Shown piece after piece: positions 29,471-47,595 of a stretch of DNA of 64,000 nt. The DNA is taken from IMG/VR virus record IMGVR_UViG_3300023174_000038, positions 248,001-312,000 of that record, one strand, 5' to 3'. The notes under the pieces are model-generated. The model saw nothing but the letters and a program-made list of their open reading frames with translations. It ran no database searches and was not told the DNA's origin. A program made the translations under genes and the position numbers. Within the stretch, counting starts at the first letter, position 1, and each line of letters begins with the position of its first letter.

Positions 29471-32188
29471 TTAACCGAAACTGAATAAATCATCAAACGT
29501 ACTGTTGGTATCTGTATTGCTACGAATATCCCAACCAAGTACACCCAATAAGTTATCAATCTTCTCATCTACTAACGTCTGTTCCATAGCTGAATCATCA
29601 AATGGTAACTCAGTAAACCATTTGGGTAAACGTAATTCATCTACGGGATATGCCACACTTGTAAACCCTAATGGATTGGGTTTGAGTTTACATACAACAA
29701 CCTTCATACCATCAATAATCTTTTGACTATAATTATCGCTGTTTACTCTACGCAAGTAATTGTAATTAAGTGCCGCTCTTACGTGACCGGGCATATTAGC
29801 TCTGCCTGTACTACTCTTTGCTTCTAAGTCACCATACATTGTAAGTTTGTTGACACCTTTAGGCGATCCTTTAGTCCAACTATCCTGTGCAGATAAGATA
29901 CGTTTGAAATCTTTTACTGCTTCAATAACTTCCTCACGACCTTTACCCTGTTGAAGAACCATCTGTAATACATTCATTAAGAATTCTTGTACATACTTAG
30001 GTGTATCAGCACGTTTTAAATCAAGACCCATAGCTTTGATATCACCCAATTGTCCGTCTTTATCTTTGCGTTTACCTTCTTTGTCAAAGATGTTAATAGC
30101 ATAACGCTTCTTAACAATAAAGATAGCACGGTCACCAATCAGTTCACGACCAGCTTTAATGATTTCACCATTCTTACGTGGTGCATGAAATGCTTTCTCC
30201 ATGAACGCGGGGAAACTATCATTTGCTTGGTCAGCAATACCGTCATATAAACCAATACAAGTTTCTTTATTCCACTCTAATGCACCAGATTCAATCTGTG
30301 GCTTTAGTGTTGGATATGCCGTAAAGTAACAACTATCTGTATCACCATACACAATAGCATTGCCTTCATGTGAATAAATACCTTCAACTGTTTCATTGAT
30401 AGTACTCATCATATGTTTAACAATCTGTCTACCGGATAGTGTTACTGATTGACCGATACGTTTATCATAGAAACGACAATGTTCATTCAACAAGGCACCA
30501 TAAGCACTATTCAATAAAATCTTACGAACAAGTTGTCGCTTATCGTAATAATCAAACATATCAGTACCATATGCTTCTTTAGCTTGTTTTTGAATTGCTT
30601 TACGTTCTGTATACCAGCGTGTGAGTAGACCAGGTACGACACCTTCTTTTTCATAGGTAAAGATTGTACCGTTAGCACTTAACATCCAAGGCTTATGACT
30701 ATCAAATATCATCTTCCAGATTTCAGCCGCTGACATCTCTACACTACGACCATCTTCAAAATCAACTGTAAGAATTGTACCACGTTCTTGGTTCATGATT
30801 GCAGTATATTCTAATGCACCAAATAGATTCTCCCAGAGAATAGATCCTGTTACAGCATCATCACCTTCTTTGTGACGTTTCTTTTCACTAGCTAATCGTA
30901 ATCCCTTATCGTGCATATATTGGTCTGTGATTGTTTGTCTGACCTGAGCAACGATGGTTTCTCCTGCCATGTTGAGGGCACGAATAACCGAGGGATAGAG
31001 TGAGTTAATGTCAACTGCTCCGACATATTCATGCATACCTCTTTTCGGCGTAGCAACAAAGGCACCTGCTGCCTGCTGGACATCTTCTTCATTTTCAACC
31101 TTTCGTTTTTTATCTGGTACTACTAAGCCACGTTCATGTGCTTCATTAAAAATTGCCATCTCAATCATTGCTACAGAACCCATTACTGTTGGAAGCAATA
31201 CTGTGTTCTCATGTGCAAGTTGATTAGCTAATTCTAAAAACTTAAGTTTGTTGTGAATCTTCACCAACAACATCGTATCTTGTCTGTTATATTCAATAAA
31301 CTTTTTAAAGTCTTTGTTATACAGTTGGTCAAGAGTACCTTCATATTGTGTTTTGTTTTCACCTACTTCCATCTCACCGATACTGTCAAGCTTATAACTA
31401 TGGCGTGATTCATAGTTATACTTTTTGTACAACTGTAGATAGTCTAAGTGAATACGACCTACTAAGTCATAAGTTGTTTCGCTTTTACCAAAGCGTTCAT
31501 ATTCTCTAGCTTTAGGCAGTTGACCCATCAAGCAAAACTTGCGTGTGTCATCCTTACTCATTACTCTAGTAACACGATTGACCATGTAGGGAATATCATA
31601 TCCCTCTGAGTTCCATCCAGTTAATACATCAGCATCTTCAATGAGTTGAAAGAAAACATCAAACATTTCCTTCTCTGATTTGAATAGCATTGTATTATCA
31701 AATTCATTAGTGATTTCTTGGGCTGTTTCACTGCTCATATGTTTCGGAGCAATCACTAATGTAATACATTGGTCTAGCCAATCTAAGTAACAACTGATAG
31801 CTGTAACTGGATTGAATGGATCACTAGTAGGACTGAAACCCTTTTCAGGATCAAAGTCTACTTCAATGTCAAAGAAGCAAGTATGAAGTTTGGGCGCATC
31901 AATGCCAAGATAGTTTTCACTTAGGCAACGAAAGACTACTGGTACATCACTTTCAAACAATTTCTTATTTGAGTGGATGCGTTTTTCTTTTTCAAACTCT
32001 TGTCGTTTGCGAGTACTGAAACGACTGACTGGATCGCCATAGATACTACGATGTTTACCCTTACTATCAGGATAATACAATACGTAGTTAGTAGGGTATT
32101 CTTTGTATTGACGCTTGCCGTCTTTGTTTCTCTCTACAACGTAGATACGATCCTCATCCCTGCTATGAATAGCGTCAATATAACTCAA
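29471..32188 (-). CDS. Family B DNA polymerase (T4 gp43-like)
   Basis: DIE and GWNSEGYDIPY exonuclease motifs; DINSLYPS, KILLNSAYG, YGDTDS, KKRY. Confidence 0.97.
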   Translation of the reverse strand: MSYIDAIHSRDEDRIYVVERNKDGKRQYKEYPTNYVLYYPDSKGKHRSIYGDPVSRFSTRKRQEFEKEKRIHSNKKLFESDVPVVFRCLSENYLGIDAPKLHTCFFDIEVDFDPEKGFSPTSDPFNPVTAISCYLDWLDQCITLVIAPKHMSSETAQEITNEFDNTMLFKSEKEMFDVFFQLIEDADVLTGWNSEGYDIPYMVNRVTRVMSKDDTRKFCLMGQLPKAREYERFGKSETTYDLVGRIHLDYLQLYKKYNYESRHSYKLDSIGEMEVGENKTQYEGTLDQLYNKDFKKFIEYNRQDTMLLVKIHNKLKFLELANQLAHENTVLLPTVMGSVAMIEMAIFNEAHERGLVVPDKKRKVENEEDVQQAAGAFVATPKRGMHEYVGAVDINSLYPSVIRALNMAGETIVAQVRQTITDQYMHDKGLRLASEKKRHKEGDDAVTGSILWENLFGALEYTAIMNQERGTILTVDFEDGRSVEMSAAEIWKMIFDSHKPWMLSANGTIFTYEKEGVVPGLLTRWYTERKAIQKQAKEAYGTDMFDYYDKRQLVRKILLNSAYGALLNEHCRFYDKRIGQSVTLSGRQIVKHMMSTINETVEGIYSHEGNAIVYGDTDSCYFTAYPTLKPQIESGALEWNKETCIGLYDGIADQANDSFPAFMEKAFHAPRKNGEIIKAGRELIGDRAIFIVKKRYAINIFDKEGKRKDKDGQLGDIKAMGLDLKRADTPKYVQEFLMNVLQMVLQQGKGREEVIEAVKDFKRILSAQDSWTKGSPKGVNKLTMYGDLEAKSSTGRANMPGHVRAALNYNYLRRVNSDNYSQKIIDGMKVVVCKLKPNPLGFTSVAYPVDELRLPKWFTELPFDDSAMEQTLVDEKIDNLLGVLGWDIRSNTDTNSTFDDLFSFG

Positions 32189-32539: not shown

Positions 32540-33181
32540 ATGAAACCCAAAGTTATATTGTATTTGGATCATCCTAGATGTTCCGTACAATCTTGCCACG
32601 GTATTATAAGGGCGCTTAGCCCAAAGTATGAAGTTGACATATTCCAGCAATATGAGATAAAAGAATCTAATTTTAAAAAATACGACATAATTGCCTTTCC
32701 CGGTGGAATTGGAGATAGTGATACATTTGATACTACTATCAGACCTAAAATGGATGTGATTAAAAATCAAATCAGCAAGGGAAAAAGATATCTTGGAATA
32801 TGTATGGGTGCTTTTTGGGCAGGTCATCATTATTTTGATATCCTCGATGATATTAAATGTGAGCAATACATTAAACAACCCGATAGCGATGTTCGTAGAC
32901 CATTTAGTACTACCGCACCTGTACTTTGGGAAGGCAAAAAATATAACATGTTTTTCTATGATGGTTGTTCATTAGTAGGAGACAATAGTAAATTTGAAAC
33001 TATTGCTACATATGTAAATAGTGATCCAATGGCTATAATACAAAACAATATAGGATTAATAGGTTGTCATCCTGAAAGTGATGAATATTGGTATGATAAA
33101 CCTTATTTAAAGAAATATTGGCATAACTTTGTACATCATCAATTGTTATTAGATTTTGTAGATAAGTTAATCAAACATTGA
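32540..33181 (+). CDS. Class I glutamine amidotransferase-like (BPL_N-like) protein
   Basis: FPGG, YLGICMGA nucleophile elbow, HPE. Confidence 0.82.
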   Translation: MKPKVILYLDHPRCSVQSCHGIIRALSPKYEVDIFQQYEIKESNFKKYDIIAFPGGIGDSDTFDTTIRPKMDVIKNQISKGKRYLGICMGAFWAGHHYFDILDDIKCEQYIKQPDSDVRRPFSTTAPVLWEGKKYNMFFYDGCSLVGDNSKFETIATYVNSDPMAIIQNNIGLIGCHPESDEYWYDKPYLKKYWHNFVHHQLLLDFVDKLIKH

Positions 33182-33768
33182 TTTTTACCTTCTACAATCT
33201 TTTTTACCAATTTAGGTAAACCCGGATTGACATGTAATGCATGTGGCATTAGTTCATTGCGAATATAATTTCGGGTATATCTGGAATTTTTATTTGATTC
33301 ATCTTCAATCCAGGGTACATTATGGCTTTCGCACCAATAGATAAATTCTTGTTTGCGTGTAGTTAGAAATGGTCTGATTACATTGTTGCGAGTTAACGGG
33401 ATAACTTTGGGCGTGCCGTGTAAGCTTGACCAAATATATGTTTCAACACAATCATCTAAATGATGACAGGTGACGACTGGTCCAAGCCCACTTAAAAAGT
33501 CATAGCGTTCTCTACGCCAGTATTCTTCTTGACTTTCTTTACTACCCTTTTGACTTCGTGGTGATCCATATAGCATTGGGATATTATTATCATTGCAATA
33601 TCTAGAAACAAACTCACTGGCTTTTTCACCGTTTTGTGTTCTATGATTAAAATGGGCGATAGTGATATCGTGTTTACGACTTAAAAAGTCAACTACTGCC
33701 ATGCTATCTACACCACCACTACATGCGATTGTGATACTTTTGGGTAAGGGTACTGTTAACTTAATCAT
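33139..33768 (-). CDS. tilS: tRNA(Ile)-lysidine synthetase, catalytic domain only
   Basis: SGGVDS, HFNH, RRERY, HHLDDCVET, RPFL, EDESN...RNYIR. Confidence 0.88.
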   Translation of the reverse strand: MIKLTVPLPKSITIACSGGVDSMAVVDFLSRKHDITIAHFNHRTQNGEKASEFVSRYCNDNNIPMLYGSPRSQKGSKESQEEYWRRERYDFLSGLGPVVTCHHLDDCVETYIWSSLHGTPKVIPLTRNNVIRPFLTTRKQEFIYWCESHNVPWIEDESNKNSRYTRNYIRNELMPHALHVNPGLPKLVKKIVEGKNQCLINLSTKSNNN

Positions 33769-33805
33769 TTATCTATTATAACATAGAATGATTTATTTTG
33801 CAATA

Positions 33806-34036
33806 TTATTGGATACCTGAGGTTGATGCGACTACACGTGTACCTATACTTAATGGACCTCTTGCAGTTGCCGTTGCAGTATCAGTAGCAAAGGTAATAC
33901 GTTGTACAGTAGATGTTTGACCGGGTGCGCTGGCCCCTCCTGCAAACCATCCTGCAGTATTACCTGAAGGCGGAGGTGCAACTGAAAATGTGATACCACC
34001 ACTAAATGTTATTCCAGCTGTAAACGTTCCTGTCAT
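33806..34036 (-). CDS. Single-repeat derivative of neighbouring repeat protein
   Basis: Similar N-leader, one AGWFAGG..RITFATDTATA.RGPLS unit and same SGIQ end as 34063..35001. Confidence 0.65.
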   Translation of the reverse strand: MTGTFTAGITFSGGITFSVAPPPSGNTAGWFAGGASAPGQTSTVQRITFATDTATATARGPLSIGTRVVASTSGIQ

Positions 34037-34062
34037 ATTGTTCTCTTTATTTGTTTTATTGT

Positions 34063-35001
34063 TTATTGTATTCCTGATGAACCGGCTGAGCTATACAATG
34101 CTGCACTTAAAGGACCACGTACACTTGCTGTTGCTGTATCTGTTGCATATGTAATTCTATCCACTAATGACGTTGCAGAAAATCCTCCTGCAAACCAACC
34201 ATAACTGTTATTACCAACTGAGGTAAAATATCCTCTACTAGAGCTAAGTGGGCCACGAATACTAGCGGTAGCAGTATCTGATGCATATGTAATACGTGAA
34301 ACGGTTGATATAACACTACTTCCACCTGCCCACCACCCATATGTGGTATTATCAGAAGATGCTGCCTGTGCATATGTACTTAGACCAAGTGGACCACGTA
34401 CACTTGCCGTTGCTGTATCTGTTGCATATGTAATACGATTGACTGTTGACACACCGCCTGGTATACCTCCGCCACCAAACCAACCATCAGTACTAATTCC
34501 GGCCGCCGCAAACCTAGAATTAGCCAAACTAAGTGGACCACGCACACTTGCTGTTGTTGTATCTGTTGCATATGTTACACGATCTACTAATGACGTTGGT
34601 GCACCCAAAGTGACCCCGCCACCAAACCAACCATCAGTAGTATTTCCGGCCGCAGCTAAATAAAATTTGGCTGCACTTAATGGGCCCCGAACACTTGCTG
34701 TTGCTGTATCAGTTGCATATGTTATTCTATTTACGGCTGATGAAGGTCCATTAACGTTGCCACCGACCCAACCATTAGTAGTATTGCCGGCACCTGCTGC
34801 GCTGCCTGTACCTGTACTTAATGGTCCGCGAATACTTGTTGTAGTAGTATCTGTGGTAAATGTAATACGATTGACAGTACTACGTACAGCAGGATTTCCT
34901 CCACTGACCCATCCTGCTGTTGCTTCAGATGGAGGTGCTGCCGTAAGCGTCCATCCTCCGCCCGATATTGTTACACCGCCACCACTAAATGTTACTGACA
35001 T
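34063..35001 (-). CDS. Repeat (beta-propeller-like) virion/surface protein
   Basis: Six ~46 aa repeats GW.GG...V.RITYATDTATASVRGPLS. Confidence 0.75.
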   Translation of the reverse strand: MSVTFSGGGVTISGGGWTLTAAPPSEATAGWVSGGNPAVRSTVNRITFTTDTTTTSIRGPLSTGTGSAAGAGNTTNGWVGGNVNGPSSAVNRITYATDTATASVRGPLSAAKFYLAAAGNTTDGWFGGGVTLGAPTSLVDRVTYATDTTTASVRGPLSLANSRFAAAGISTDGWFGGGGIPGGVSTVNRITYATDTATASVRGPLGLSTYAQAASSDNTTYGWWAGGSSVISTVSRITYASDTATASIRGPLSSSRGYFTSVGNNSYGWFAGGFSATSLVDRITYATDTATASVRGPLSAALYSSAGSSGIQ

Positions 35002-35069
35002 TCTTTATTCCCTTTATTGTATTTATCAAAAAAGGCCCTGTAGAGCCTCTTTTTAGTGAATGTAGAATC

Positions 35070-35741
35070 TTACTTAGTTCTTTTTATTTTTTTCTTTGCT
35101 GGAAGTGTTTTCTGTTCTTCCGCTACCTTATCAAGTACCGTTGTTTCACCATTAGGTAATTCTAACATAATATCTTTTTGCTCTAATAACACTGTACCTT
35201 GTGGAACTAATCCAACCATCATCAATGATTGTAATGTTTGTGGGTTACTCATAGCATTTAACAATTTAGCTGGACTTGGTCTACCCATTGCAATAATTTC
35301 AGATTGTATCTCACGACCAACCGTTACTGTAAATTCATAGTTAGCATTAGCTTCAAACATTTCATCATCACTATATGGTGTGCCATCTGGATGTTTAAGT
35401 CTAGTTGGTTCTACTTCTGCATAGAGTTCAGCCAACAATTTTTCTAGTATTTTAATCTCTTTACGATTAAGTTCAAAAGCATGTTTTTGATCGTCCAAGT
35501 GTGATTCCAATTCAAGTATTTCTGCTTGTAGATTAAGTAGAATATGGGGTAATGCTGGAACTGTTTTTAGATGTTTAAGTTCTTCAAGTTTAGCCTGATA
35601 TTTTAATTCGGCACATTCTTCTAGTACTGCGGCACGTTTTCTTCCAACATAGAAGCCTTGAAGTGTTTTGATTTTTTCCCAGGGGGTACTACCGATAACC
35701 TGATAGCGGTAGTTAAATTCTGAATTTAGATTTGAAGCCAT
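35070..35741 (-). CDS. Coiled-coil hypothetical protein
   Basis: NSEFNYRYQVIG.TPWEK; helical. Confidence 0.72.
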   Translation of the reverse strand: MASNLNSEFNYRYQVIGSTPWEKIKTLQGFYVGRKRAAVLEECAELKYQAKLEELKHLKTVPALPHILLNLQAEILELESHLDDQKHAFELNRKEIKILEKLLAELYAEVEPTRLKHPDGTPYSDDEMFEANANYEFTVTVGREIQSEIIAMGRPSPAKLLNAMSNPQTLQSLMMVGLVPQGTVLLEQKDIMLELPNGETTVLDKVAEEQKTLPAKKKIKRTK

Positions 35742-35808
35742 TTTTTCTCTCTATAAGTTGTTTATAGAGATATTTAATAGCTTTTTTGTGTGAGTAAATT
35801 TTTTTAAT

Positions 35809-36018
35809 TTATTCTCTTGGATAATCTGGAAATGGTACCCAATTAGTTGTAGCTTCATCCCATAAGTATGGATAACCATCACTTGGAATACTAACTGGTG
35901 CAACATATGTAGTTGCTGCCTCATCCCATGTCCATGATGATGGATGTTCTGCATTGAATGCATTTTCTCTTGCTTGTGCAATTTCCTCTTGTGTTGGAGG
36001 TGTTGTGTTTTCTATCAT
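35809..36018 (-). CDS. Small Trp/Pro-rich tail-fibre-associated-like protein
   Basis: PSSWTWDE...YLWDEATTNW; AAGGA RBS. Confidence 0.65.
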   Translation of the reverse strand: MIENTTPPTQEEIAQARENAFNAEHPSSWTWDEAATTYVAPVSIPSDGYPYLWDEATTNWVPFPDYPRE

Positions 36019-36039
36019 TTTGTTTTCCTTTTTAAAAAA

Positions 36040-36972
36040 TTAAGAACCGTAGGCTGCGGCTCCAAGTTCGCCTCTAGCAGTGCCCACCCCGGTAGTATCT
36101 GTAGCAACCACGCCTGTATTTGATACTAGATTAGTCATTGATACTCTTACTCCAACCTCACCGTATCCAAAGATAGCTTTATCAGTTCCATAACCTGCGG
36201 CTGCAAGATTCATTCTAGCAGTACCGACTCCGGTAGTATCAGTTGCGACAACACCGGTGTTTGATACTAGATTGGTAATTGAATAATAACCACCATCAAA
36301 TCCATAACCAAATATAGCTTTACCTGTACCGTAACCAGCGGCCGCCAAACTATTTCTAACAGTACCGACACCCGTGGTATCTGTTGCTACTACTCCTGTG
36401 TTTGACACTAGGTTGGTTACTGCTGTTCTAGCACTTCCATATCCATATCCAAAAATAGCTTGTCCACTACTGCCGTAGCCGGCAGCTGCCAATGCCTGTC
36501 TAGCTGTACCAACCCCTGTTGTATCTGTGGCTACTACGCCTGTGTTTGAAACTAAATTAGTCATTGAGAACACAATAGTATTATTTGTTCCATATCCAAA
36601 TAAGGCTTTATCAGTGCCATACCCTGCGGCCGCCAAACTAGTTCTAGCAGTGCCCACTCCAGTTGTGTCATTGGCAACCACGCCTGTATTACTTACTAAA
36701 TTGGTTATTGCCGTATTACCGGTAGAATACCCGTATCCAAAAATAGCTTTATCTGTACCGTAACCTGCGGCTGCAAGTTGATATCTAGCAGTGCCCACAC
36801 CAGTTGTATCTGTAGCAACTACACCCGCACTTGTTACTAGGTTGGTTATTGCTGTTACACCTACCCCACCAATGTATCCATATCCAAATATAGCTTTATT
36901 ACCGCCTGGAGGTGGTGTAATAGCCCATCCTCCGCCATTTAATGTTATTCCACCTGTAATTGTTATTGACAT
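36040..36972 (-). CDS. Repeat (beta-propeller-like) virion/surface protein
   Basis: Six ~47 aa repeats KAIFGYG...TNLVSNTGVVATDTTGVGTAR..LAAAGYG. Confidence 0.78.
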   Translation of the reverse strand: MSITITGGITLNGGGWAITPPPGGNKAIFGYGYIGGVGVTAITNLVTSAGVVATDTTGVGTARYQLAAAGYGTDKAIFGYGYSTGNTAITNLVSNTGVVANDTTGVGTARTSLAAAGYGTDKALFGYGTNNTIVFSMTNLVSNTGVVATDTTGVGTARQALAAAGYGSSGQAIFGYGYGSARTAVTNLVSNTGVVATDTTGVGTVRNSLAAAGYGTGKAIFGYGFDGGYYSITNLVSNTGVVATDTTGVGTARMNLAAAGYGTDKAIFGYGEVGVRVSMTNLVSNTGVVATDTTGVGTARGELGAAAYGS

Positions 36973-36982
36973 TTTTTAACCT

Positions 36983-37936
36983 TTATTGAAAAATTTCTGG
37001 ATGTGCTTTGCCAAATATCTTAATATACTTGCCAGCCATTACATCCGCTTCAGCTTCTATTGGACTACCAGGATAACTATCACCCGGCTTAATCATATTT
37101 AATTCACCCTGACGTACATGTGTTAATTCATGGAACACAGTACGTAATATATCTACTAAATTTCTATTAGCACAATAAACCCATACTTCACCCGTCTCTG
37201 GATTATGTCTTCCAGTATGATGACCTTCTTGTGCTTCATCACTATCATAACTAAACTCTATCTTTGGAGTATTTTGTAAATTCAACTTCTTACTTGTCCA
37301 AGCAAGAAACTTCTGTACAATAGGATTACTATTCAAATCTTCTTGTTCAGCTTCTGTAATGTAGGGCTTTAATAACTCTGGATCATATCCTTTATGTCTA
37401 GCAGAATCTCGTAATCGTCTTAACCCTTTAGCTTCAATTTGTCTTATTCTATCTCTAGACAAGTCAAACCTATCACCAATCTGTTGTAATGTCATGTCAT
37501 ACCAAAATCTTAAAATTAATACTTTTCGTTGGTCATCGGTTAATCTGTCTAAGCCGTTTTGGATAATTTGTTTAATACTATCATCTGTTGCAGGCTCCTC
37601 ACCAGCTGGATCTTTATATGGTACTCGTTCTGCCCTATTATAAATATCGTTTGGATCATTTAATGTTGGCATTTTATTATGAGCTCCACGATATGTAGCA
37701 CCATCTGGGTTGTAATGTCGTCCTCCAACCTCATCTAGTTTATCTTTAATCCAATTGTCTGGAGTTTTATGATATTTTCTAACAAATAAATCATGCAATG
37801 CATCACCAGTAATACGGTGTTTCTTTGCTATGTTTTTCATTAGCTTATCAATGGTATTATAGTCGTGTTTCTCTAAGCTAGGAAGTTTCTTAGCTAGTTC
37901 AACTGCGGCTGATTCGTATAGTTCTATTGCTCTCAT
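36983..37936 (-). CDS. Mosaic putative virion-internal protein: sigma70 region 4 plus HExxH zincin
   Basis: Start MRAIELYE after TAAATA; LT..QR.VL.LRF...TLQQIG..FDLSRDRIRQIEAKGLRRLR; YITEA linker; FHELTH...EAEA. Confidence 0.78.
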   Translation of the reverse strand: MRAIELYESAAVELAKKLPSLEKHDYNTIDKLMKNIAKKHRITGDALHDLFVRKYHKTPDNWIKDKLDEVGGRHYNPDGATYRGAHNKMPTLNDPNDIYNRAERVPYKDPAGEEPATDDSIKQIIQNGLDRLTDDQRKVLILRFWYDMTLQQIGDRFDLSRDRIRQIEAKGLRRLRDSARHKGYDPELLKPYITEAEQEDLNSNPIVQKFLAWTSKKLNLQNTPKIEFSYDSDEAQEGHHTGRHNPETGEVWVYCANRNLVDILRTVFHELTHVRQGELNMIKPGDSYPGSPIEAEADVMAGKYIKIFGKAHPEIFQ

Positions 37937-37947
37937 ATTAGTATTTA

Positions 37948-38038
37948 TGCTCACTTTTGATTTCACAGTAGCGAATTGTTACATCAGGCCAGCAGCCGGC
38001 CCACACTTGAAAACGCAAAGGTCCTAAGGTAGTGTGTT
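37948..38038 (-). ncRNA. Candidate structured non-coding RNA
   Basis: GC-rich intergenic with stems CACACT/AGTGTG, GGCCG/TGGCC, TGAT..ACA/TGT..ATCA. Confidence 0.4.
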
Positions 38039-38039
38039 C

Positions 38040-38852
38040 TTAATCATTCGTCTTACATTTAGCACGTTTAGCATTGGTTAATGCTCCGTAATCTACTGGC
38101 CATTCTTTACCAGGCTGTAACTCTTTAGCGTTTGCAGGGAAATGGTACTTTACACCTGCATATTCTTGTATCTGTGCTAATGGAGCACGAAACTGTGTCA
38201 AATCATTACCCAAATTAACATATGGTTTCTTATGTGGGAACTGCCATCCAGCAACTTCATGTGTAACATTGTTAATAACAATCTTGTAGTAACCATGAGG
38301 AACAACTACACCATTACCAATCTTTTCATTACCTGTACCATAATATGCACCTACATAAATTGTGAATGGTTGTTTTAGTTGTACTGCCCATCCACGTATA
38401 CTTGTTTCTAATAGTTTCCATATGCCACGATTCAATGAACCATGTTGAGGATACATATTAGTCATTAAAAAACTTTCATATTCTACTTGTTGTGTCCAAG
38501 ATAGATCACCATCTGGTGCAGCATGACCTTTGTCATAACCCGTAGCTACATAATCATCAGGCTTTGCACCATCTTTAATACTAGCATCAGCAACAAAAGC
38601 GTTTGTTCTTGGGAAACAACCTAAAGCATTTTCTGGCTTAAGAGTGTATGCTACATATACTGGTATCTTTGCTGGCGAATCATATGCTACAAGATATGCT
38701 TCACGACATATTGGTTGTGATGGTCTTGCTGTTTGTGCAAATCCGTACGGACTATGTATTTGACATTGTTGTACTGGTAAGGGAGCACGTTGATCCCATG
38801 CAAATATATTTGTTGATATTAGTACTGTTGCTATTGCTATTATTTTTTTCAT
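38040..38852 (-). CDS. Secreted DNA/RNA non-specific endonuclease (NucA/EndA family)
   Basis: Signal peptide; YDKGHAAP, TNMYPQ...LNRGIW..LE, VPHGYYK. Confidence 0.9.
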   Translation of the reverse strand: MKKIIAIATVLISTNIFAWDQRAPLPVQQCQIHSPYGFAQTARPSQPICREAYLVAYDSPAKIPVYVAYTLKPENALGCFPRTNAFVADASIKDGAKPDDYVATGYDKGHAAPDGDLSWTQQVEYESFLMTNMYPQHGSLNRGIWKLLETSIRGWAVQLKQPFTIYVGAYYGTGNEKIGNGVVVPHGYYKIVINNVTHEVAGWQFPHKKPYVNLGNDLTQFRAPLAQIQEYAGVKYHFPANAKELQPGKEWPVDYGALTNAKRAKCKTND

Positions 38853-38862
38853 TCAATCCTCT

Positions 38863-39489
38863 TTATCCTACTACTGTACGATTCTTTACTTTACTAATTT
38901 CTACACTGAGTGGTGTATTAGTTGTTTTTGCTCTAAATATCTTATCAGTCTCACGTACACCTGGCTTAAGTTCAGATGCTACAATTAAGAATCTTGCTCT
39001 ATTCTTTCTCATGCCAATAAACTCACCTACTAATACTTGGTAATTAGGATAGTTAGGTGTTAAATCTATTTTAGGATTTTCTTGTTCATTGATGCTTTCT
39101 GACACACCTTGTGCAATTGCTTCACGTGCCTGACGTTCATTTTCTTGTTTGAATCGTTGCATGGCTTGACTATCATTTATTTGTCCACGATCCAGTGCTT
39201 GCCAAATTGGCAAATCAAATGTGAGATATTTTTTTTGTACTGCTTGAGCATAACTAACTTCATTGCCACGACCTTGCCAATCAGGTTTATGCCCCCAAAC
39301 AACAGATACAGATTGACCATTTGGGAAGTTGATACGCATACGCTCTCCATAAAATACATATGTACTACCTTGCCATGTAAAAGCAAGATCGCCATTAACT
39401 GTTTTACCCATAGACCAGCCATGCTTTTTTAACAGTGAATCAACTGCGGCTTGATTATCATTCTCAATAATAAACTCTGTTGCTCTCAT
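38863..39489 (-). CDS. Mosaic putative virion-internal protein
   Basis: N-term MRATEFIIE; internal QGVSESINE linker. Confidence 0.68.
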   Translation of the reverse strand: MRATEFIIENDNQAAVDSLLKKHGWSMGKTVNGDLAFTWQGSTYVFYGERMRINFPNGQSVSVVWGHKPDWQGRGNEVSYAQAVQKKYLTFDLPIWQALDRGQINDSQAMQRFKQENERQAREAIAQGVSESINEQENPKIDLTPNYPNYQVLVGEFIGMRKNRARFLIVASELKPGVRETDKIFRAKTTNTPLSVEISKVKNRTVVG

Positions 39490-39929
39490 TACTCACGTTC
39501 TCTTTTTAATGTTGAACGGATAAACCATGCTTTCTTACCGTATAGGTCTTGCAGTTCAGCCATGTAGTTAGCAATACCCTGTTGACGTTCATTTGTTGCT
39601 TCATCAAACATAGCAACAACAAGTTGACCTAATGTTTCACAATCTTGTAGTAACTCAATAAACATGAGTTCAGCTCTTGGAACTTTAGTTTGGTCTTGAA
39701 TGATACTTAATTCAGCATAACGTGTTAGACTGCCAGGAGTATAGTGACCTAATATTCTGATATATTCAGCTACAGGATCAATAGTAGCATTTACATCTTC
39801 ATACAATGTATTAAAGAATTCGTGATATTGTGGGAAGTTACTTCCCTCCACATTCCAATGAAAGTTTTGTGATTTGATAGCAAAGCTTTGTGTACTAGCT
39901 AATAGTACTTTTAAATTATCTGATAACAT
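39489..39929 (-). CDS. dps: Dps/ferritin-like protein
   Basis: FHWNVEGSNF..YHEFF...D.VAE.IR. Confidence 0.9.
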   Translation of the reverse strand: MLSDNLKVLLASTQSFAIKSQNFHWNVEGSNFPQYHEFFNTLYEDVNATIDPVAEYIRILGHYTPGSLTRYAELSIIQDQTKVPRAELMFIELLQDCETLGQLVVAMFDEATNERQQGIANYMAELQDLYGKKAWFIRSTLKRERE

Positions 39930-39938
39930 GATTACTCG

Positions 39939-42900
39939 TTAGTCTTTCTTTTTTGTATTAACATTGATGGCTTTACCACTACGGTCAGGATTAGGATCTT
40001 CTCTACGTTTACGTTGAGCGGCACTTGCACGACCCTTCTTACCTAGACTATGTGCTTTACTTTGTGGCAAGCATTTTGGTTTACCTTCTCCTGGTTCTCT
40101 AGCACATGGACCTTTAATCTTTCCTTTAGTATCCATGCGAACCCACTTTTCTTTATTAAACCAATCATGCAAACTTTCATCTGCCCTTTCAATACCTTCT
40201 AGTATAGAACTTTCATTCTTCTTCCCACCGTTACCCCAGTTACTTGCGCCTTTGTTGCGACACTTAACTAATGCACCACTGGCATAAGCACTTGGCCATA
40301 CTTTATAACGACTCTTTACTTTGTAGTAGCAAGCATCTTTCTTTTCGTTCATTAATTCTTCACTAACCATTTCGCCACCACAGTGTGGGCAACTTTCACT
40401 GTGTTGGTCTTCATTTGTTTTATTTTTAGCACAACTACCCGGAAAGCCTGCTTTAGTACCAGCAACTCTATGATAGCCGGACCAGCATTTCAATTCATCT
40501 AGTTGATCTTTTGAATGGTCACCGTGTGTTTCACACATACCGCAGTCTTCACAGACCATTTCCATTTCAATGCTTTCATTGTGCTTCTTCTTACCTGCAC
40601 AATGAGCCTTTTGACTAAAGCCTTTAGGATGACTACAGTTAATACTGCTCTTATATTTTTGACTCCAGCCTTCATCCATCTCTTGTTCATTAACGTAAAT
40701 TGCGGCAGTTGTTTTATTTAAACTTTGTGGATCTTTTACGCCGGCTGCTACTTTAATTGCTTTAACTTTTTGTCTATAGTCATCAGCATATTCGGCTAAT
40801 CTGTAGCCTAACATTTTACCAATTTCTTCAGGTGTAGCTGGTTTATCTTGCGGAGTATTTGCACCAAAAGTTGTGTCTAGTATCTTAGGCCATGCCATCC
40901 AGACCATATTTGATAACTCTTTATATGCTTTGCTTCTTAATTCTTTAATTTGAGCTTCAGCCTCATCTTCAGAAATACTAGGTGCGGGTGCAGGAATAGT
41001 TCCTTTGAATGCTTGAGCATTACCGGCACCGCCTAATCCTGCGGCAGCTAATGCGCCGGCGCCTGCTGCCTTACCCATGTTACCTAAAAACCCTCTACGG
41101 TTCATATCAGCTTCTTTCAAACCTGATTTTTTACGTATATACAATCTATCCTGTAATATTGAAATAGCATTGTCTAACTTTTTATTCAATGATTGATAGT
41201 TATCTTTTGCACCATACTTAACGTGCATACTAGTATCAGTATCATTCTGCATTGCAGGAGTTAACAAACCTTTACGTTCTAATCTATCAACTAACTTATC
41301 TAATAGTTCTTGCTTTTGTATAGCATTATCTAATTGTGCTAATCTAGCTTTTAATACAGAATGTTTTTCACCAGGTTGTGCAACTGGTGTTGGTTGAAAT
41401 TCTCTACGTAAACCTTGTTGTGCTTTTTGTACTGTGTTCTTTTCAAAATCTTGTCTCCAAGCTTCTATTTCAGCTTCACGCTGTTTCTCTATAGCTAATT
41501 TAGCTTGAATCAACGCATCCAATGATGTAGATTTTAATTGATCACCTAAGTTTTCATCAATTGATGCATAACGCTTATCATCTAAATCATCGTGGTAACT
41601 TCTTTGTGGTGGTTTTTTTAGCTCTATTGGTTTCTTAGATGAACCTCTATAACCACGTTCCCATGCCGCTGCACCTGCTGCCGCACTTTTACCATTTTTA
41701 ACAAAGTGATTAATGACTTCTTGTTTACTGTTAAATCTAGGTGATTCTATACCTTCATTTGTTGCCATTTCGCCATCATTACTATGACCATAATATTTGG
41801 CTACTTTTTGTAAATCAGCAGAATTTCTATCGTTAAGATAATCAGTTACTAAATCATGTATCTGATATCTTTGTTCTTGCGGGGCTGGTAATTCTATTTC
41901 ACCTTCACTTGCATCAGCAATATGTGCGGCGCCGGGACTGTCTAAGAACCATATCTCATCATCCTCATCCCATTCTAATCCCCATTTGTCTATTGTTGCA
42001 GTTAATACATAGTTGTTAGTAGTACCTACTACAAATTTGTTACCGCCTATATAACGTGAGCTATTTGGTTGACCGTAATCTTTTGGTCCTTTAGGGCCGC
42101 CAGTTTGTACAAATTCATTTATACCTTGACTGATACCAGATTTCTTTGTATCATTAGCAAATTGTTTTTTAGTTGCACGAACAATACCACTGAAACGTTT
42201 ATCACCACGCTTGTAATCGCCCTCTTTATCAGCTTTTCCTGCATCGGCAGCGGCCGCTGTTTTATATTGTGCTAGTTTCTCATTAGAGATTTCATCTAGT
42301 TGTGATTCAGGCATTAATCCGTGCTTTGTAATACGAGCATCTAATTCATCACGCTCTTTGGAATATTTTTGTATAAGTTCTTTATTACCTACTTGAATTG
42401 CTTGTCTAAGTTTTTCCTGAATGGCATCTGCTAAATCATAGTATTGATCCATTTTCATTCTAGTGGTATTATCTTCTTTTATTGTTTTACCTTGACCTAA
42501 TTGTTGTAAATCACTTGTTAATACATCTTGTGTAACACTACCCATACCTTTTGAAATCGTAATGCGAGAATGTTTACGATCCTTACTCATAGCAACTACT
42601 TTTGATGGTTGTCCAAAATACTTAACAGTATCACCTATCTGTATGTTCTTCATAGATACATTACCAACATTAACCGGTTTATCACCTGCAAAGTTACCTT
42701 GATCTCCCCATGGGTCATCTAAACTTTCATTTGTACCAGTAGCTAATCTATCATGGTCACTATCACGTTGGGCTTTTTCTGCCGCTGCCTTCATAGCACG
42801 ACCTTTAGCAAAATCTTTTTCTTGTCTTATTAAACCATATGGATCATACTCATCATCATCTGTTTGTGTATGTCTACCACGTTTAGGATATGATGGTGCA

Positions 42901-42983
42901 TCTGCCCCGTATTCTCTTGCTGGATCATTATGTCCGTAAAAAGGATTGGATTCGTTTATTATACCTTTTAGAATATTGCTCAT
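39939..42983 (-). CDS. Large mosaic putative virion-internal polyprotein
   Basis: Many short unrelated modules separated by xxE linkers (IINES, TNES, IKED, LDEI, INEF, TNEG, IDEN, LKEA, MDEG, LDEL, MNEK, ILEG). Confidence 0.75.
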   Translation of the reverse strand: MSNILKGIINESNPFYGHNDPAREYGADAPSYPKRGRHTQTDDDEYDPYGLIRQEKDFAKGRAMKAAAEKAQRDSDHDRLATGTNESLDDPWGDQGNFAGDKPVNVGNVSMKNIQIGDTVKYFGQPSKVVAMSKDRKHSRITISKGMGSVTQDVLTSDLQQLGQGKTIKEDNTTRMKMDQYYDLADAIQEKLRQAIQVGNKELIQKYSKERDELDARITKHGLMPESQLDEISNEKLAQYKTAAAADAGKADKEGDYKRGDKRFSGIVRATKKQFANDTKKSGISQGINEFVQTGGPKGPKDYGQPNSSRYIGGNKFVVGTTNNYVLTATIDKWGLEWDEDDEIWFLDSPGAAHIADASEGEIELPAPQEQRYQIHDLVTDYLNDRNSADLQKVAKYYGHSNDGEMATNEGIESPRFNSKQEVINHFVKNGKSAAAGAAAWERGYRGSSKKPIELKKPPQRSYHDDLDDKRYASIDENLGDQLKSTSLDALIQAKLAIEKQREAEIEAWRQDFEKNTVQKAQQGLRREFQPTPVAQPGEKHSVLKARLAQLDNAIQKQELLDKLVDRLERKGLLTPAMQNDTDTSMHVKYGAKDNYQSLNKKLDNAISILQDRLYIRKKSGLKEADMNRRGFLGNMGKAAGAGALAAAGLGGAGNAQAFKGTIPAPAPSISEDEAEAQIKELRSKAYKELSNMVWMAWPKILDTTFGANTPQDKPATPEEIGKMLGYRLAEYADDYRQKVKAIKVAAGVKDPQSLNKTTAAIYVNEQEMDEGWSQKYKSSINCSHPKGFSQKAHCAGKKKHNESIEMEMVCEDCGMCETHGDHSKDQLDELKCWSGYHRVAGTKAGFPGSCAKNKTNEDQHSESCPHCGGEMVSEELMNEKKDACYYKVKSRYKVWPSAYASGALVKCRNKGASNWGNGGKKNESSILEGIERADESLHDWFNKEKWVRMDTKGKIKGPCAREPGEGKPKCLPQSKAHSLGKKGRASAAQRKRREDPNPDRSGKAINVNTKKKD

Positions 42984-42984
42984 A

Positions 42985-43866
42985 TCACGCTTTCTTATTC
43001 TTGTTATCTAACATGCCACGCTTATTAGCTGTTGCCCAAGCAATGTTCTCCGCTTCTTTTTTACTGTGACCTAATTTCTTTTCACTTTGTGCTACATGCT
43101 TAACCATACGGTCTACTTTAGCACCTTCATCTATTGGTGCATGAACTGGACATTGGTCTTGACCATGTGTTCTACACACACATTTCAAATTAGGTTTGCC
43201 TTCTGCTACGCCCTGTTGACCATACGTATCAAGAATTTGTCTAACATAAAAATTATAAAAACCACGACGGCTATTGTATTCTCTATCTCCAAGTACAGTC
43301 TTTAGTGCTTTTACAGCATCAGTTACTTCTGGGCCACGCATTATTTTTAATGAGTCAGTAACTAGTGTATCACCTCTTTGTGAGCCTTCTGATACACCTT
43401 GAACTTGTTTACCTTCTAAGTATTCACGTATAGTGTTTAGATAATCATTGGCTTTAATAATCTTTTCTTGTACCCAACCATCAAGACCTTCTTCTTCACT
43501 AAGGTCTTTAATCATTGAATAAACTTGTTGAGCATTCTTTGCGGCACTGAATAGATCACTACGTGCCATCTCAACTTCGTGGTCTATACGACTTTGACCA
43601 TGTGGCACAAATCCATTTTTACGACTACGTCCTTGTCCCGGAACGACAATAACATCATCTTCTTGTAGTTCTGCTTCACTTATTTCAGCACTTTCATTAA
43701 TGCTGTTAGCATATGGAGCACTAGTCTTTTTACCCTTGAATAGTGTGCCTACTTTCTTGCCACCATATATGCTAGGATTTCCCCTAGATTGTGTGCCACC
43801 TAATGGTGAATTTACAGTAGCTATTGCACCTGCTGTTGTAGTTTCAGTGATTTGTTTGATTTTCAT
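42985..43866 (-). CDS. Mosaic putative virion-internal polyprotein
   Basis: MKIKQITE; SINES, QGVSEG, QGVAEG, IDEG linkers; DHEVEMARSDL...WVQEKI module. Confidence 0.72.
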   Translation of the reverse strand: MKIKQITETTTAGAIATVNSPLGGTQSRGNPSIYGGKKVGTLFKGKKTSAPYANSINESAEISEAELQEDDVIVVPGQGRSRKNGFVPHGQSRIDHEVEMARSDLFSAAKNAQQVYSMIKDLSEEEGLDGWVQEKIIKANDYLNTIREYLEGKQVQGVSEGSQRGDTLVTDSLKIMRGPEVTDAVKALKTVLGDREYNSRRGFYNFYVRQILDTYGQQGVAEGKPNLKCVCRTHGQDQCPVHAPIDEGAKVDRMVKHVAQSEKKLGHSKKEAENIAWATANKRGMLDNKNKKA

Positions 43867-43920
43867 AAGGATTTCCGTACTAATAGTGTATTTATCAAAA
43901 TACCATAATATGGAAACTTA

Positions 43921-44835
43921 TTAGATTTTGCCTGAGGGCTTTGCTGTTGGTGGGATACCTGCTCTACTAGTATTCCAATAGAATGCTTTTGCGTTCTTTT
44001 TGATACTGTCAGGCTTAACATCTACTGTTAATGCTGTACTAAAACGAGGGTCATTCTTCTGTTTTTTGCTTGGGATATAGCCCGAAGCTTCACCTACATA
44101 CATTTCATCTACATTAGCGTACATATTGTCTAAACTTAAATGTTTGCTATGTAATTTGTCTCTCAAGTCATATAGTTTTGTAATATAGCCCCTGCTACGT
44201 AATGCTTTATATGCTAAATTTTCAGGGCTAAACTCACCACCTTTATCTAATCCAGCTTGACGATATTGTTTAATCTTTTTTAATACTTTATTGACTTTAC
44301 TTATTTTATCAGATTGTAATACTGTATCAATAATGTCTAATAGTTTTATATATTTTGCTTTAGTAGCTGTTTGGTCAAAGTTAGCTCTACGTTTTGCAGG
44401 CATACGCAACCATTTATTATCTTTAACACTATACTCACCTAAGCTAGTGACAGGTTCTGCCGCATCTTGTATGTATAATTCTACCGGAATTCCATTGATA
44501 GTAATATCATGTGAATCATTGTATAAATCTTTTTTAGCCTTAAAGAATTCATGGTAAATGTCATCGTCAGGTAAATCCTTCATATTGACTAAGATATGTA
44601 AATCTAAATCACTATGGTCTGTATAACTATAGGCTGCATTACTTCCGGATATAGTAATATCACGTACATCCAAATCATGTATACCCATCTCTTGTAAGAA
44701 ATCTTGTGCTATGTGTTTTAGTTGTAGTTCAACTTCAGGTTGAAGATGTTGTCCACGGAATAACTTTGGATTGAGGTTATCGTGAAATGTCACAGCATCT
44801 GACATTTTGAATGAATGTAATTCTTTTAAGTCCAT
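43921..44835 (-). CDS. Pol-beta-superfamily nucleotidyltransferase with appended C-terminal module
   Basis: SGSNAAY...SDLDLH...VELY; VGEA linker then SGYIPSKKQKNDPRF module. Confidence 0.78.
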   Translation of the reverse strand: MDLKELHSFKMSDAVTFHDNLNPKLFRGQHLQPEVELQLKHIAQDFLQEMGIHDLDVRDITISGSNAAYSYTDHSDLDLHILVNMKDLPDDDIYHEFFKAKKDLYNDSHDITINGIPVELYIQDAAEPVTSLGEYSVKDNKWLRMPAKRRANFDQTATKAKYIKLLDIIDTVLQSDKISKVNKVLKKIKQYRQAGLDKGGEFSPENLAYKALRSRGYITKLYDLRDKLHSKHLSLDNMYANVDEMYVGEASGYIPSKKQKNDPRFSTALTVDVKPDSIKKNAKAFYWNTSRAGIPPTAKPSGKI

Positions 44836-44857
44836 AGAGTATTTATCTAAAAACTAT

Positions 44858-44879
44858 AAAGCCCCTTTCGGGGCTTTAT
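44858..44879 (-). terminator. Intrinsic terminator
   Basis: AAAGCCC-(CGAAA)-GGGCTTT hairpin at end of 44879..45850. Confidence 0.65.
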
Positions 44880-45850: not shown

Positions 45851-45901
45851 TTGATCCTCTTGTTAAGATACTATTATTTACATCAAAACAAGGGGGTCAA
45901 A

Positions 45902-47560: not shown

Positions 47561-47595
47561 GGTAAATCCTCTATTTTATTAGAGTATTTATCATT

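What the first reader, a model, noticed from the sequence alone, without database searches (positions are those of the whole stretch)
37400..37575. Isolated sigma-70 region 4 module within a putative packaged polyprotein
Seen: a close match to primary-sigma region 4.2 (TLQQIGDRFDLSRDRIRQIEAKGLRRLR) without region 2, flanked by LDEV and ITEA linkers, next to a zincin domain. Inference: once released it could bind the RNAP beta-flap or -35 elements, or titrate anti-sigma factors, giving immediate transcription takeover by mimicry.
Basis: partly seen in the sequence, partly recalled or inferred. Interest (0 to 1): 0.62.

Follow-up and report, generated by a model that had tools for sequence, protein, structure and literature searches.

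The report
Sigma region-4 cassette in phage polyprotein
A giant T4-related phage carries a stand-alone copy of the promoter- and polymerase-docking end of the bacterial sigma factor as a movable cassette inside a protein built like a capsid-packaged, protease-cut cargo, so it may be injected to tamper with host transcription, though neither packaging nor that function has been shown.

Summary
ORF 36983-37936 (- strand, 317 aa from the ATG that all homologues use) has a complete sigma-70 region 4 (Pfam PF04545, E 8e-19) and no region 2. It is the only sigma domain Pfam finds in this 348.7 kb T4-related jumbo phage.

Layout: an 8-residue leader ending LYE; a 60-residue helical domain ending LDE; a 126-residue cassette (a conserved, disordered stretch plus region 4) ending ITE; and a zincin with intact HExxH and ExxxD.

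Over 1,400 metagenomic homologues exist. Most are 191-194 aa and lack exactly this cassette, at the same genomic position. The cut runs from one x-E site to the next.

The cassette also recurs in unrelated phage polyproteins, with x-E on both sides wherever both flanks are held; one shows eight stereotyped G-V-A-E linkers.

The genome encodes a T4 gp21-type prohead protease, whose T4 enzyme cuts after L/I-x-E. A cytidylyltransferase homologue with a similar leader was detected in cyanophage S-SM1 virions.

Processing and packaging are therefore well supported by comparison but remain unproven. Beta-flap binding has only weak support (score 0.39, best control 0.00). I rate it a new variant of packaged internal or polyvalent phage proteins.

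The parts
36983..37936 (-). Whole gene: 317 aa plus stop, from the ATG used by all homologues. The ORF listing extends it to a GTG at 37966.
37942..37949 (-). CATAAATA, a T4-late-promoter-like motif that ends 5 nt before the ATG.
   Evidence: The same NATAAATA motif precedes baseplate, virion and tail-fibre-like genes. A gp55-like late sigma is present.
37913..37936 (-). 8-residue N-terminal leader ending L-Y-E before Ser, resembling the T4 capsid targeting sequence.
37730..37912 (-). N-domain, residues 9-69: four helices, ending in the near-invariant L-D-E.
   Evidence: It resembles an AraC/Ada-type HTH at Z 6-7.7. A similar stretch occurs in cytidyltransferase-like polyproteins.
37352..37729 (-). 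Mobile sigma-4 cassette, residues 70-195, delimited by LDE|V and ITE|A. It is absent from the 191-194 aa orthologues.
37586..37729 (-). N-terminal extension of the cassette, residues 70-117. AF2 predicts it disordered, yet it holds the invariant Y-x-P-x-G-x-T-Y-R-G ... M-P-x-L motif.
37388..37585 (-). Sigma-70 region 4 fold (4.1 + 4.2 + C-terminal helix), residues 118-183.
36986..37351 (-). Minimal gluzincin domain, residues 196-317.
   Evidence: pLDDT about 88. Matches Wss1, SPRTN, selecase and ArdC at Z 6-8. Matches viral IrrE-N-terminal-like proteins at E 9e-8.
37118..37132 (-). HExxH (H-E-L-T-H) catalytic motif. H, E and H are invariant in the family.
37043..37057 (-). E-x-x-x-D (E-A-E-A-D), the gluzincin third-ligand helix. 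E and D are invariant.

Best explanation
The sigma region-4 segment is an autonomous, mobile protein cassette (residues 70-195). It sits inside a small polyprotein of a T4-related jumbo phage.

Shown:
- It is a genuine, complete sigma-70 region 4 without region 2.
- It is an insertion relative to syntenic orthologues.
- It is delimited exactly by x-E sites.
- The same cassette occurs in at least four to five other polyprotein architectures.

Inferred:
- The gene is transcribed late.
- The N-terminal leader, which resembles the T4 capsid targeting sequence, takes the protein into the prohead.
- The phage's gp21-type prohead protease cuts after LYE, LDE and ITE.
- A free fragment of about 14 kDa (conserved unstructured extension plus the sigma-4 fold) and a free zincin stay in the head and enter the cell with the DNA.

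Most speculative step: the fragment acts as a sigma-4 mimic that engages a natural region-4 partner on the host transcription machinery. The most likely partner is the beta-flap tip of RNA polymerase, with the invariant extension adding a second contact. This would bias host transcription from the first moments of infection. The outcome would resemble that of T4 AsiA or gp33, without homology to either.
For: - Domain identity.
- Only one sigma-4 and no region 2 in the genome.
- Insertion relative to syntenic 191-aa orthologues, with junction LDE|[cassette...ITE]|(A/S)EQEDL against LDE|S-(K/E)QEDL.
- Patchy presence on the backbone tree (at least 8 changes, 2 forced by starred branches).
- The same cassette at 34-48% identity in other contexts: cytidylyltransferase polyproteins on 241 kb and 165 kb contigs, an 808+ aa polyprotein with eight (Q/K)GVAE| linkers, membrane-like fusions, and a second insertion position in the zincin family.
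- [LI]xE sites only at residues 8, 69 and 195 of the window protein. P = 3e-5 in shuffles for hitting all three borders and nowhere else. The sites are conserved across the family and lie in low-confidence linkers.
- Peptidase_S77 prohead protease in the genome.
- T4 gp21 cuts after L/I-x-E and a 10-residue CTS suffices for packaging: PMC9026906.
- Leader-type N-termini are enriched in this genome, 27 of 384 genes against about 10 expected.
- S-SM1 T4-GC190 cytidylyltransferase has a T4-like leader, is homologous to the cassette-bearing P0124, and was detected in purified virions.
- A late-promoter-like motif precedes the gene and a gp55 homologue is present.
- Cassette invariants lie in the extension and the hydrophobic core or pocket rather than the recognition helix.
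- Complex prediction with E. coli beta 831-1057: ipSAE 0.39 against a best control of 0.00; runs agree in at least 82% of contacts; partner pLDDT at least 71. The tool's verdict is weak support.
Against: - There is no proteomic, transcript or biochemical evidence for this protein or this phage.
- The virion evidence concerns a distant homologue of a different cassette-bearing family, not the zincin family.
- The S-SRM01 stand-alone zincin has no such leader.
- The complex score is in the range the tool calls more often wrong than right unless the guess was already likely. It may also reflect memory of solved sigma-4/flap complexes.
- A free region 4 would have to compete with the tethered region 4 of host sigma-70, which is unfavourable unless the extension adds affinity (inference).
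- Close relatives without the cassette exist, so it is dispensable.
- No stand-alone cassette gene was found.
- The host is unknown.
Confidence: 0.4

Rival explanations
1. The module is not released. It acts as a tether that brings the attached zincin to promoter DNA or to RNA polymerase, so the protease cleaves a DNA- or RNAP-associated host protein. This would be a DNA-dependent protease in the manner of Wss1/SPRTN, ArdC or IrrE.
For: The zincin resembles Wss1, SPRTN, ArdC and IrrE-like proteins. The N-domain also looks HTH-like. The catalytic motifs are intact.
Against: The same cassette occurs in polyproteins with no zincin at all. The I-x-E site between cassette and zincin is kept in most divergent copies. 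The linker L-D-E is near-invariant although predicted disordered.
Confidence: 0.2
2. The protein is not packaged. It is a cytoplasmic late protein, and its sigma-4 domain works with the phage's gp55-like region-2-only sigma as a split sigma or gp33-like co-activator on the beta flap.
For: A gp55 homologue is present. No gp33 homologue was detected (uninformative because gp33 is small and divergent). A late-promoter-like motif precedes the gene. T4 gp33 sets a precedent for a separate flap binder (PMC7824862).
Against: Near-identical phages lack the cassette at this locus, so it cannot be a core transcription factor. This reading does not explain the leader, the x-E flanks or the recurrence in heterogeneous polyproteins.
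Confidence: 0.15
3. The region-4 fold serves as a generic DNA-binding handle. It keeps the cargo on the packaged DNA for co-ejection, or it coats or protects -35-like sites on the phage DNA. It has no interaction with RNA polymerase.
For: In the window copy the sigma-70 -35 contact residues (equivalents of R584, R586, R588, Q589) are retained. T4 internal proteins are DNA-associated.
Against: These residues vary among cassette copies, while the extension motif and core residues are invariant. The disordered extension would remain unexplained.
Confidence: 0.12
4. The protein is an ordinary phage sigma factor, as JGI's automatic name suggests ('RNA polymerase sigma factor (sigma-70 family)').
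For: The automatic names and the Pfam region 4 match.
Against: There is no region 2 or 3. Two thirds of the protein consists of an unrelated helical domain and a zincin. Orthologues lack the sigma part altogether.
Confidence: 0.01

Closest known systems
T4 internal proteins (IPI, IPII, IPIII) and Alt: capsid-targeted, gp21-processed, injected head proteins
   Same: A short N-terminal leader ending in hydrophobic-x-E, comparable to the T4 CTS MKTYQEFIAE. The genome has a gp21-type protease. There is a late-promoter-like motif. The cargo is hypervariable and mostly of unknown family. Alt is a precedent for an injected protein acting on host RNAP (PMC5512222).
   Different: Here several cargo units are strung into polyproteins with internal x-E linkers. 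The cargo is a sigma-4 domain, which is not known for any T4 internal protein. Packaging of this protein has not been shown.
Polyvalent proteins of phages and conjugative elements (Iyer, Burroughs, Anand, de Souza, Aravind 2017, PMC5512222)
   Same: Multi-domain proteins built from shuffled effector cassettes, with a zincin-like metallopeptidase as the commonest hub domain. They are predicted to be delivered with the DNA and to jump-start or subvert transcription. The zincin and N-domain of this family recur in large viral amidoligase, AAA and cytidyltransferase proteins.
   Different: That paper does not mention a sigma domain ('sigma' occurs 0 times). It proposes processing by the zincin itself. 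Here the stereotyped x-E linkers and the gp21 homologue point to the prohead protease instead. This protein is also small, with only three units.
T4 AsiA and gp33 (phage factors acting at the sigma region 4 / beta-flap interface)
   Same: The proposed site of action is the same: the region 4 / beta-flap-tip interface that governs -35-dependent initiation (PMC6755090, listed and not read; PMC7824862).
   Different: There is no sequence or fold relationship. AsiA binds region 4 and gp33 replaces it, whereas this is region 4 itself. Both T4 factors are made after infection rather than carried in the virion.
'Minimal' single-HTH sigma factors of group 2 jumbo phages (Iyer et al. 2021, PMC7824862)
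   Same: The same phage group (family B polymerase, gp23-type capsid, no own RNAP) is reported to encode sigma-like proteins reduced to one HTH that binds the flap.
   Different: Those are described as free-standing transcription factors. This one is a cassette inside a leader-bearing, x-E-delimited polyprotein next to a zincin, and it is absent from close relatives.
ImmA/IrrE (M78), SprT/Wss1/SPRTN and ArdC minimal zincins
   Same: The C-terminal domain has the HExxH plus downstream Glu helix. It has the three-strand, three-helix zincin core.
   Different: No Pfam family reaches threshold and there is no PDB sequence match. Structural Z scores of 6-8 are in the range the tool calls common. 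The substrate is unknown.

Membership tests
Sigma-70 family sigma factor | Region 2 (core binding, -10 recognition and melting) | tested here: not met
   No PF04542 hit in the protein or anywhere in the genome at E <= 0.1. The N-domain is shared with sigma-less orthologues.
Sigma-70 family sigma factor | Region 4 HTH (4.1 + 4.2) | tested here: met
   PF04545 at E 8.4e-19. Aligns with RpoD 534-604. AF2 helices span residues 119-192.
T4-type capsid-targeted internal head proteins | N-terminal leader of about 10 residues ending in L/I-x-E | tested here: met
   The leader ends L-Y-E at residue 8. The motif is kept in nearly all of the 120 homologues listed, though the leader sequence varies. Such leaders are enriched genome-wide, 27 against about 10 expected.
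T4-type capsid-targeted internal head proteins | A gp21-type (Peptidase_S77) prohead protease in the same genome | tested here: met
   PF03420 at 97 bits, G000 98606-99037. It lies next to portal, scaffold-like and major head genes.
T4-type capsid-targeted internal head proteins | Late expression | tested here: inconclusive
   CATAAATA lies 5 nt upstream of the ATG. NATAAATA also precedes baseplate and virion genes. A gp55 homologue is present. No transcript data were examined.
T4-type capsid-targeted internal head proteins | Physical presence of the processed protein in virions | not testable with these tools
   Only indirect evidence: the S-SM1 T4-GC190 cytidylyltransferase (same type of leader, homologous to cassette-bearing P0124) was detected in virions.
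Polyvalent proteins (Iyer et al. 2017) | Several unrelated effector-type domains in one phage-encoded polypeptide, shuffled between architectures | tested here: met
   Three units in this protein. The cassette, N-domain and zincin each recur in other architectures.
Polyvalent proteins (Iyer et al. 2017) | Zincin-like metallopeptidase hub domain | tested here: met
   Invariant HExxH and ExxxD. Zincin fold.
Polyvalent proteins (Iyer et al. 2017) | Delivery into the recipient cell together with the DNA | not testable with these tools
   Inferred only from the leader, the protease and the virion-detected homologue.
Beta-flap / region-4 directed phage factors (AsiA, gp33) | Homology to AsiA or gp33 | tested here: not met
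   The module is homologous to sigma region 4 itself. A T4 gp33 query finds nothing in the genome. AsiA was not queried.
Beta-flap / region-4 directed phage factors (AsiA, gp33) | Binding at the beta-flap tip | tested here: inconclusive
   Complex prediction gave 0.39 against a best control of 0.00. The tool's verdict is weak support, and the score may reflect memory of solved complexes.
ImmA/IrrE (Peptidase_M78) zincins | Match to the family profile | tested here: not met
   No PF06114 hit at E <= 1. There are only fold-level and language-model resemblances.

The most novel reading that the evidence does not exclude
Aquatic T4-related (jumbo) phages use a cassette system of capsid-targeted polyproteins. 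The prohead protease dices these at x-E linkers into many small injected effectors. One effector is a host-derived sigma-70 region-4 mimic with an added invariant peptide. It docks on the RNA polymerase beta flap (or on another region-4 partner such as an anti-sigma) and reprogrammes host transcription before any phage gene is expressed. This would be a virion-delivered form of sigma mimicry not described so far.
Probability: 0.25. Interest if true: 0.85.

Novelty: new variant of a known kind. Interest (0 to 1): 0.66.

Why it matters
Phages are known to attack the sigma region 4 / beta-flap interface with proteins made after infection, such as AsiA and gp33. They are also known to inject enzymes that modify RNA polymerase, such as Alt. 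An injected copy of region 4 itself would be a third strategy: molecular mimicry delivered at time zero.

The wider pattern may matter more. Leader-bearing polyproteins with stereotyped x-E linkers and freely shuffled cassettes appear here, including the sigma-4 module, zincin, cytidylyltransferase and a Tat-signal-bearing unit. This suggests a large, mostly unannotated effector repertoire in abundant freshwater and marine T4-like phages. The leader and linkers give a simple sequence rule for finding such cargo.

The idea is directly testable with virion proteomics, the established T4 CTS packaging system, and standard RNAP binding assays.

Tried and rejected
- Megablast of 4 kb around the gene against 50,697 phage records: no match.
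- tblastn of the protein against the same records: only partial hits, to bacterial-type rpoD fragments and to one cyanophage stand-alone zincin.
- Word search for stand-alone versions of the cassette (69-220 aa): nothing. This is not proof of absence.
- PDB sequence search with the zincin: nothing at E <= 10.
- Foldseek against the PDB: no hit at E <= 0.001 for either model. The full-length model's long alignments to whole sigma factors have TM about 0.2 and rmsd above 20 A, so I rejected them as evidence that the N-domain is a region 2.
- Pfam on ten other leader-bearing or neighbouring proteins: almost nothing.
- Sigma-70 promoter scan of 33000-48000: 59 sites against 54.6 +/- 6.7 in shuffles, so uninformative.
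- T4 gp33 query against the genome: no match, uninformative.
- Complex prediction of the sigma-4 part with the E. coli beta flap: only 'weak support'. I use it as a weak indication only.
- Recent capture from the host: rejected. The cassette GC (0.362) equals the genome's (0.358), and all phage copies share a Trp and lack the 4-residue insert of cellular primary sigmas.
- Intein or homing element: considered on domain content only and set aside, because nothing but region 4 is detected in the insert.

Full report
**What the window is.** The window is bases 248001-312000 of a single 348,701-bp virus record that CheckV rates as complete. Its family B DNA polymerase (29471-32188, - strand) is at most 48% identical to any cultured phage. 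The closest are Sinorhizobium phage Phosso, Agrobacterium phage Atu_ph07 and the RaK2-like Klebsiella phages. These are T4-related jumbo myoviruses of 'group 2' in the scheme of PMC7824862. Megablast finds no close relative among 50,697 phage records. The genome is 36% G+C.

**The observation.**
- The ORF listing gives a 327-aa ORF from a GTG at 37966. All homologues start at the ATG at 37936 with M-R-A, so the protein is 317 aa (36983-37936 including the stop).
- Pfam Sigma70_r4 matches at E 8.4e-19.
- Against the PDB, residues about 115-192 align with region 4 of RpoD, SigA and RpoS, from the end of the 3.2 linker almost to sigma's C-terminus.
- There is no region 2 in the protein or in the whole genome. 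This is also the genome's only region 4 match.
The JGI automatic name 'RNA polymerase sigma factor' is wrong as a description of the whole protein.

**Anatomy.** AlphaFold2 with a 46-sequence alignment gave mean pLDDT 73. It shows:
- four helices at residues 3-70;
- a stretch at residues 66-116 with pLDDT below 50;
- the region 4 helices at residues 119-192;
- a confident alpha/beta domain at residues 205-317.

The last domain carries H-E-L-T-H and, 21 residues later, E-A-E-A-D. Both the HExxH and the ExxxD residues are invariant in the family.

A second model, of a 191-aa orthologue (pLDDT 82), was searched against structure libraries:
- The C-domain matches Wss1, SPRTN, selecase, abylysin and ArdC at Z 6-8.
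- It matches viral 'IrrE N-terminal-like' proteins at E 9e-8.
- No Pfam family passes threshold and there is no PDB sequence match.
- It is a minimal gluzincin of unassigned family.
- The N-domain resembles one AraC/Ada-type HTH subdomain at Z 6-7.7. That range is common for small helical domains.

**The module is an insertion that orthologues lack.**
- The word-index search returned 1,483 homologues.
- About 30 clusters are 315-382 aa and carry Sigma70_r4.
- The great majority are 191-194 aa and consist only of leader, N-domain and zincin.
- In four metagenomic contigs the 191-aa gene lies between an Endonuclease_NS gene and a 310-314 aa glycine-rich gene, a few kb from a PP-loop ATPase gene and the DNA polymerase. 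This is the same position as in the window (compare).
- Junction in short forms: L-D-E, then S-(K/E)-Q-E-D-L.
- Junction in long forms: L-D-E, then the cassette ending I-T-E or I-K-E, then (A/S)-E-Q-E-D-L.
- The insert therefore runs exactly from just after one x-E to the next x-E.
- On a tree of the shared 191 columns, cassette presence needs at least 8 changes. Starred branches force 2 of them.
- Forms with and without the cassette can be 95% identical on the backbone.
- Some variants carry a further 40-65-residue insert at the same point.

**The same cassette in other proteins.** Searching with the cassette region and scanning IMG/VR found it at 34-48% identity in unrelated contexts:
1. After a cytidylyltransferase-like domain, in proteins of 380-538 aa on 165-kb and 241-kb contigs. 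It is followed there by modules that also occur in the window's 1014-aa ORF.
2. As the last unit of a protein of at least 808 aa, in which eight units are separated by a stereotyped (Q/K)-G-V-A-E then G/A/S linker (L042).
3. Fused to Gly/Ala-rich hydrophobic tails (L039, L041).
4. In a 382-aa protein on a 101-kb contig (L043).
5. At a different position in the zincin family, after a duplicated leader (P0058).

Wherever both flanks are on the contig, an x-E precedes and follows the cassette.

All phage copies share a Trp at the position of sigma-70 G564. All lack the four-residue insert that cellular primary sigmas have between 4.1 and 4.2. This suggests one capture followed by spread among phages (inference). 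The cassette's G+C equals the genome's.

**Evidence for processing and packaging.**
- T4 internal proteins enter the prohead through a 10-residue capsid targeting sequence, MKTYQEFIAE.
- The T4 prohead protease gp21 cuts after L/I-x-E (PMC9026906).
- This genome encodes a Peptidase_S77 homologue of gp21 at 97 bits. It lies beside the portal, a scaffold-like gene and the major head gene.
- The window protein has exactly three [LI]xE sites, with the Glu at residues 8, 69 and 195. These are the end of the leader and the two borders of the cassette.
- In 100,000 shuffles of the protein, the chance that all three borders are hit within 3 residues and no other site exists is 3e-5.
- The three sites are conserved in nearly all of the homologues examined, while the leader sequence itself varies.
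- Leader-type N-termini are enriched genome-wide: 27 of 384 genes against a mean of 10 in control windows.
- Several leaders begin M-R-A-x-E-F. Four lie in the gene row containing the target.
- One window gene (13485-14810) has a second, internal leader complete with its Met. This is what a fusion of two leader-bearing genes would look like.
- The S-SRM01 'cytidyltransferase' begins MKNFHQFITE then A.
- The S-SM1 orthologue SSM1_190 (T4-GC190) begins MKKFSAFLNE then A. It matches the N-terminal domain of the cassette-bearing protein P0124 at E 9e-8. T4-GC190 was detected by mass spectrometry in purified S-SM1 virions (PMC3037559).
- This is the only experimental anchor, and it is indirect.

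**Expression.**
- CATAAATA ends 5 nt before the ATG.
- NATAAATA occurs within 60 nt upstream of 75 of 384 genes. These include baseplate wedge, virion structural and tail-fibre-like genes.
- A homologue of the T4 late sigma gp55 is present.
- This is consistent with late expression, as expected for head cargo. No transcript data were examined.

**What the fragment might do.**
- Across eleven cassette copies, the invariant positions are ten residues of the AF2-disordered extension (Y-x-P-x-G-x-T-Y-R-G, then M-P-x-L) plus five residues of the region 4 core or pocket.
- The equivalents of the sigma-70 -35 contact residues are intact in the window copy. That residue mapping is my own, derived from the alignment.
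- The same residues are replaced in several other copies.
- This pattern favours a conserved protein partner over a fixed DNA site.
- The single complex prediction, of residues 118-205 (P0001 numbering, from the GTG; 108-195 in the 317-aa numbering used elsewhere) with E. coli beta 831-1057, scored 0.39 against a best control of 0.00. Runs agreed in at least 82% of contacts and partner pLDDT was at least 71.
- The tool rates this as weak support and warns that solved sigma-4/flap complexes may be remembered.
- My best reading is a virion-delivered sigma-4 mimic acting at the beta flap, with the extension as a second contact. I hold that last step at roughly one in three.

**Rival readings.** These are:
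- a non-released tether for the zincin;
- a cytoplasmic gp33-like co-activator;
- a plain DNA handle.

The cassette's occurrence without any zincin, and its absence from near-identical phages, count against the first two.

**Relation to known systems.** The closest known kinds are T4 CTS-bearing internal proteins and Alt, and the 'polyvalent proteins' of PMC5512222.
- That paper names the zincin-like peptidase as the hub domain and proposes processing by it. It never mentions a sigma domain.
- PMC7824862 notes minimal single-HTH sigma factors in group 2 jumbo phages, but describes them as free-standing factors.
- Three searches of the held papers for phage sigma-4 decoys, a virion-borne sigma-4 domain and CTS polyproteins found no description of a sigma-4 cassette in capsid-targeted polyproteins.
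- I therefore class it as a new variant of a known kind.

Noticed in passing
window 39939-42983 (-), Tat-like stretch at 40986-41105: A 1014-aa leader-bearing ORF that looks like a polyprotein. It shares modules with P0124, L042 and cyanophage small proteins. It contains an internal twin-arginine-type signal (R-R-G-F-L followed by an Ala/Gly-rich stretch ending A-Q-A) directly after an L-K-E site. If cleaved there, the released piece would begin with an export signal.
   Followed up: partly
window 13485-14810 (+), second leader at 14448: A 441-aa protein that starts with an M-R-F-T-E-I-I-T-E leader and has a second complete leader (M-K-I-E-E-L-I-T-E) at residue 322, before a DUF6321 domain. 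It looks like a fusion of two leader-bearing genes.
   Followed up: partly
window 37942-37949, 44840-44847 and others; genome-wide: About 24 genes have NATAAATA starting 11-13 nt before the ATG, which puts the motif at canonical -10 spacing for a transcript starting at the ATG (possible leaderless mRNAs). A second class at -24 to -36 precedes structural genes.
   Followed up: partly
window 36040-36972 (-) and 34063-35001 (-): Glycine-rich proteins built of repeats of about 45 residues (for example ...T-N-L-V-S-N-T-G-V-V-A-T-D-T-T-G-V-G-T-A-R...). Many paralogues across the genome begin M-S-(V/I)-T-(F/I)-(S/T)-G-G, and several have a GATAAATA motif upstream. They may be fibres or decoration proteins.
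   Followed up: no
window 38040-38852 (-) and 39489-39929 (-): An Endonuclease_NS gene with a Sec-type signal peptide and a Dps/ferritin-like gene lie in the same gene row as the leader-bearing genes.
   Followed up: no
window 45902-47029 (-): A cytidylyltransferase-like protein (PF01467, E 5.6e-4, below cut-off). It is called from a TTG start and has no obvious leader. Its start site deserves checking.
   Followed up: partly
window 42985-43866 (-): A 293-aa leader-bearing protein with internal Q-G-V-A-E-G and Q-G-V-S-E-G linkers of the same type as in the L042 polyprotein.
   Followed up: partly
L059 (G000 87076-87318) and L002/L055 (G000 98540-101514): A gp55-like late sigma lies in a 309-aa open frame, against 185 aa in T4. 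The major head protein has several [LI]xE sites in its first 45 residues, and a GIY-YIG-like ORF follows its gene.
   Followed up: no
L008 3959-4357 (Synechococcus phage S-SRM01): A stand-alone 132-aa version of the zincin without a CTS-like leader lies next to the leader-bearing cytidyltransferase gene and near the DNA polymerase. Not every member of the zincin family looks capsid-targeted.
   Followed up: partly
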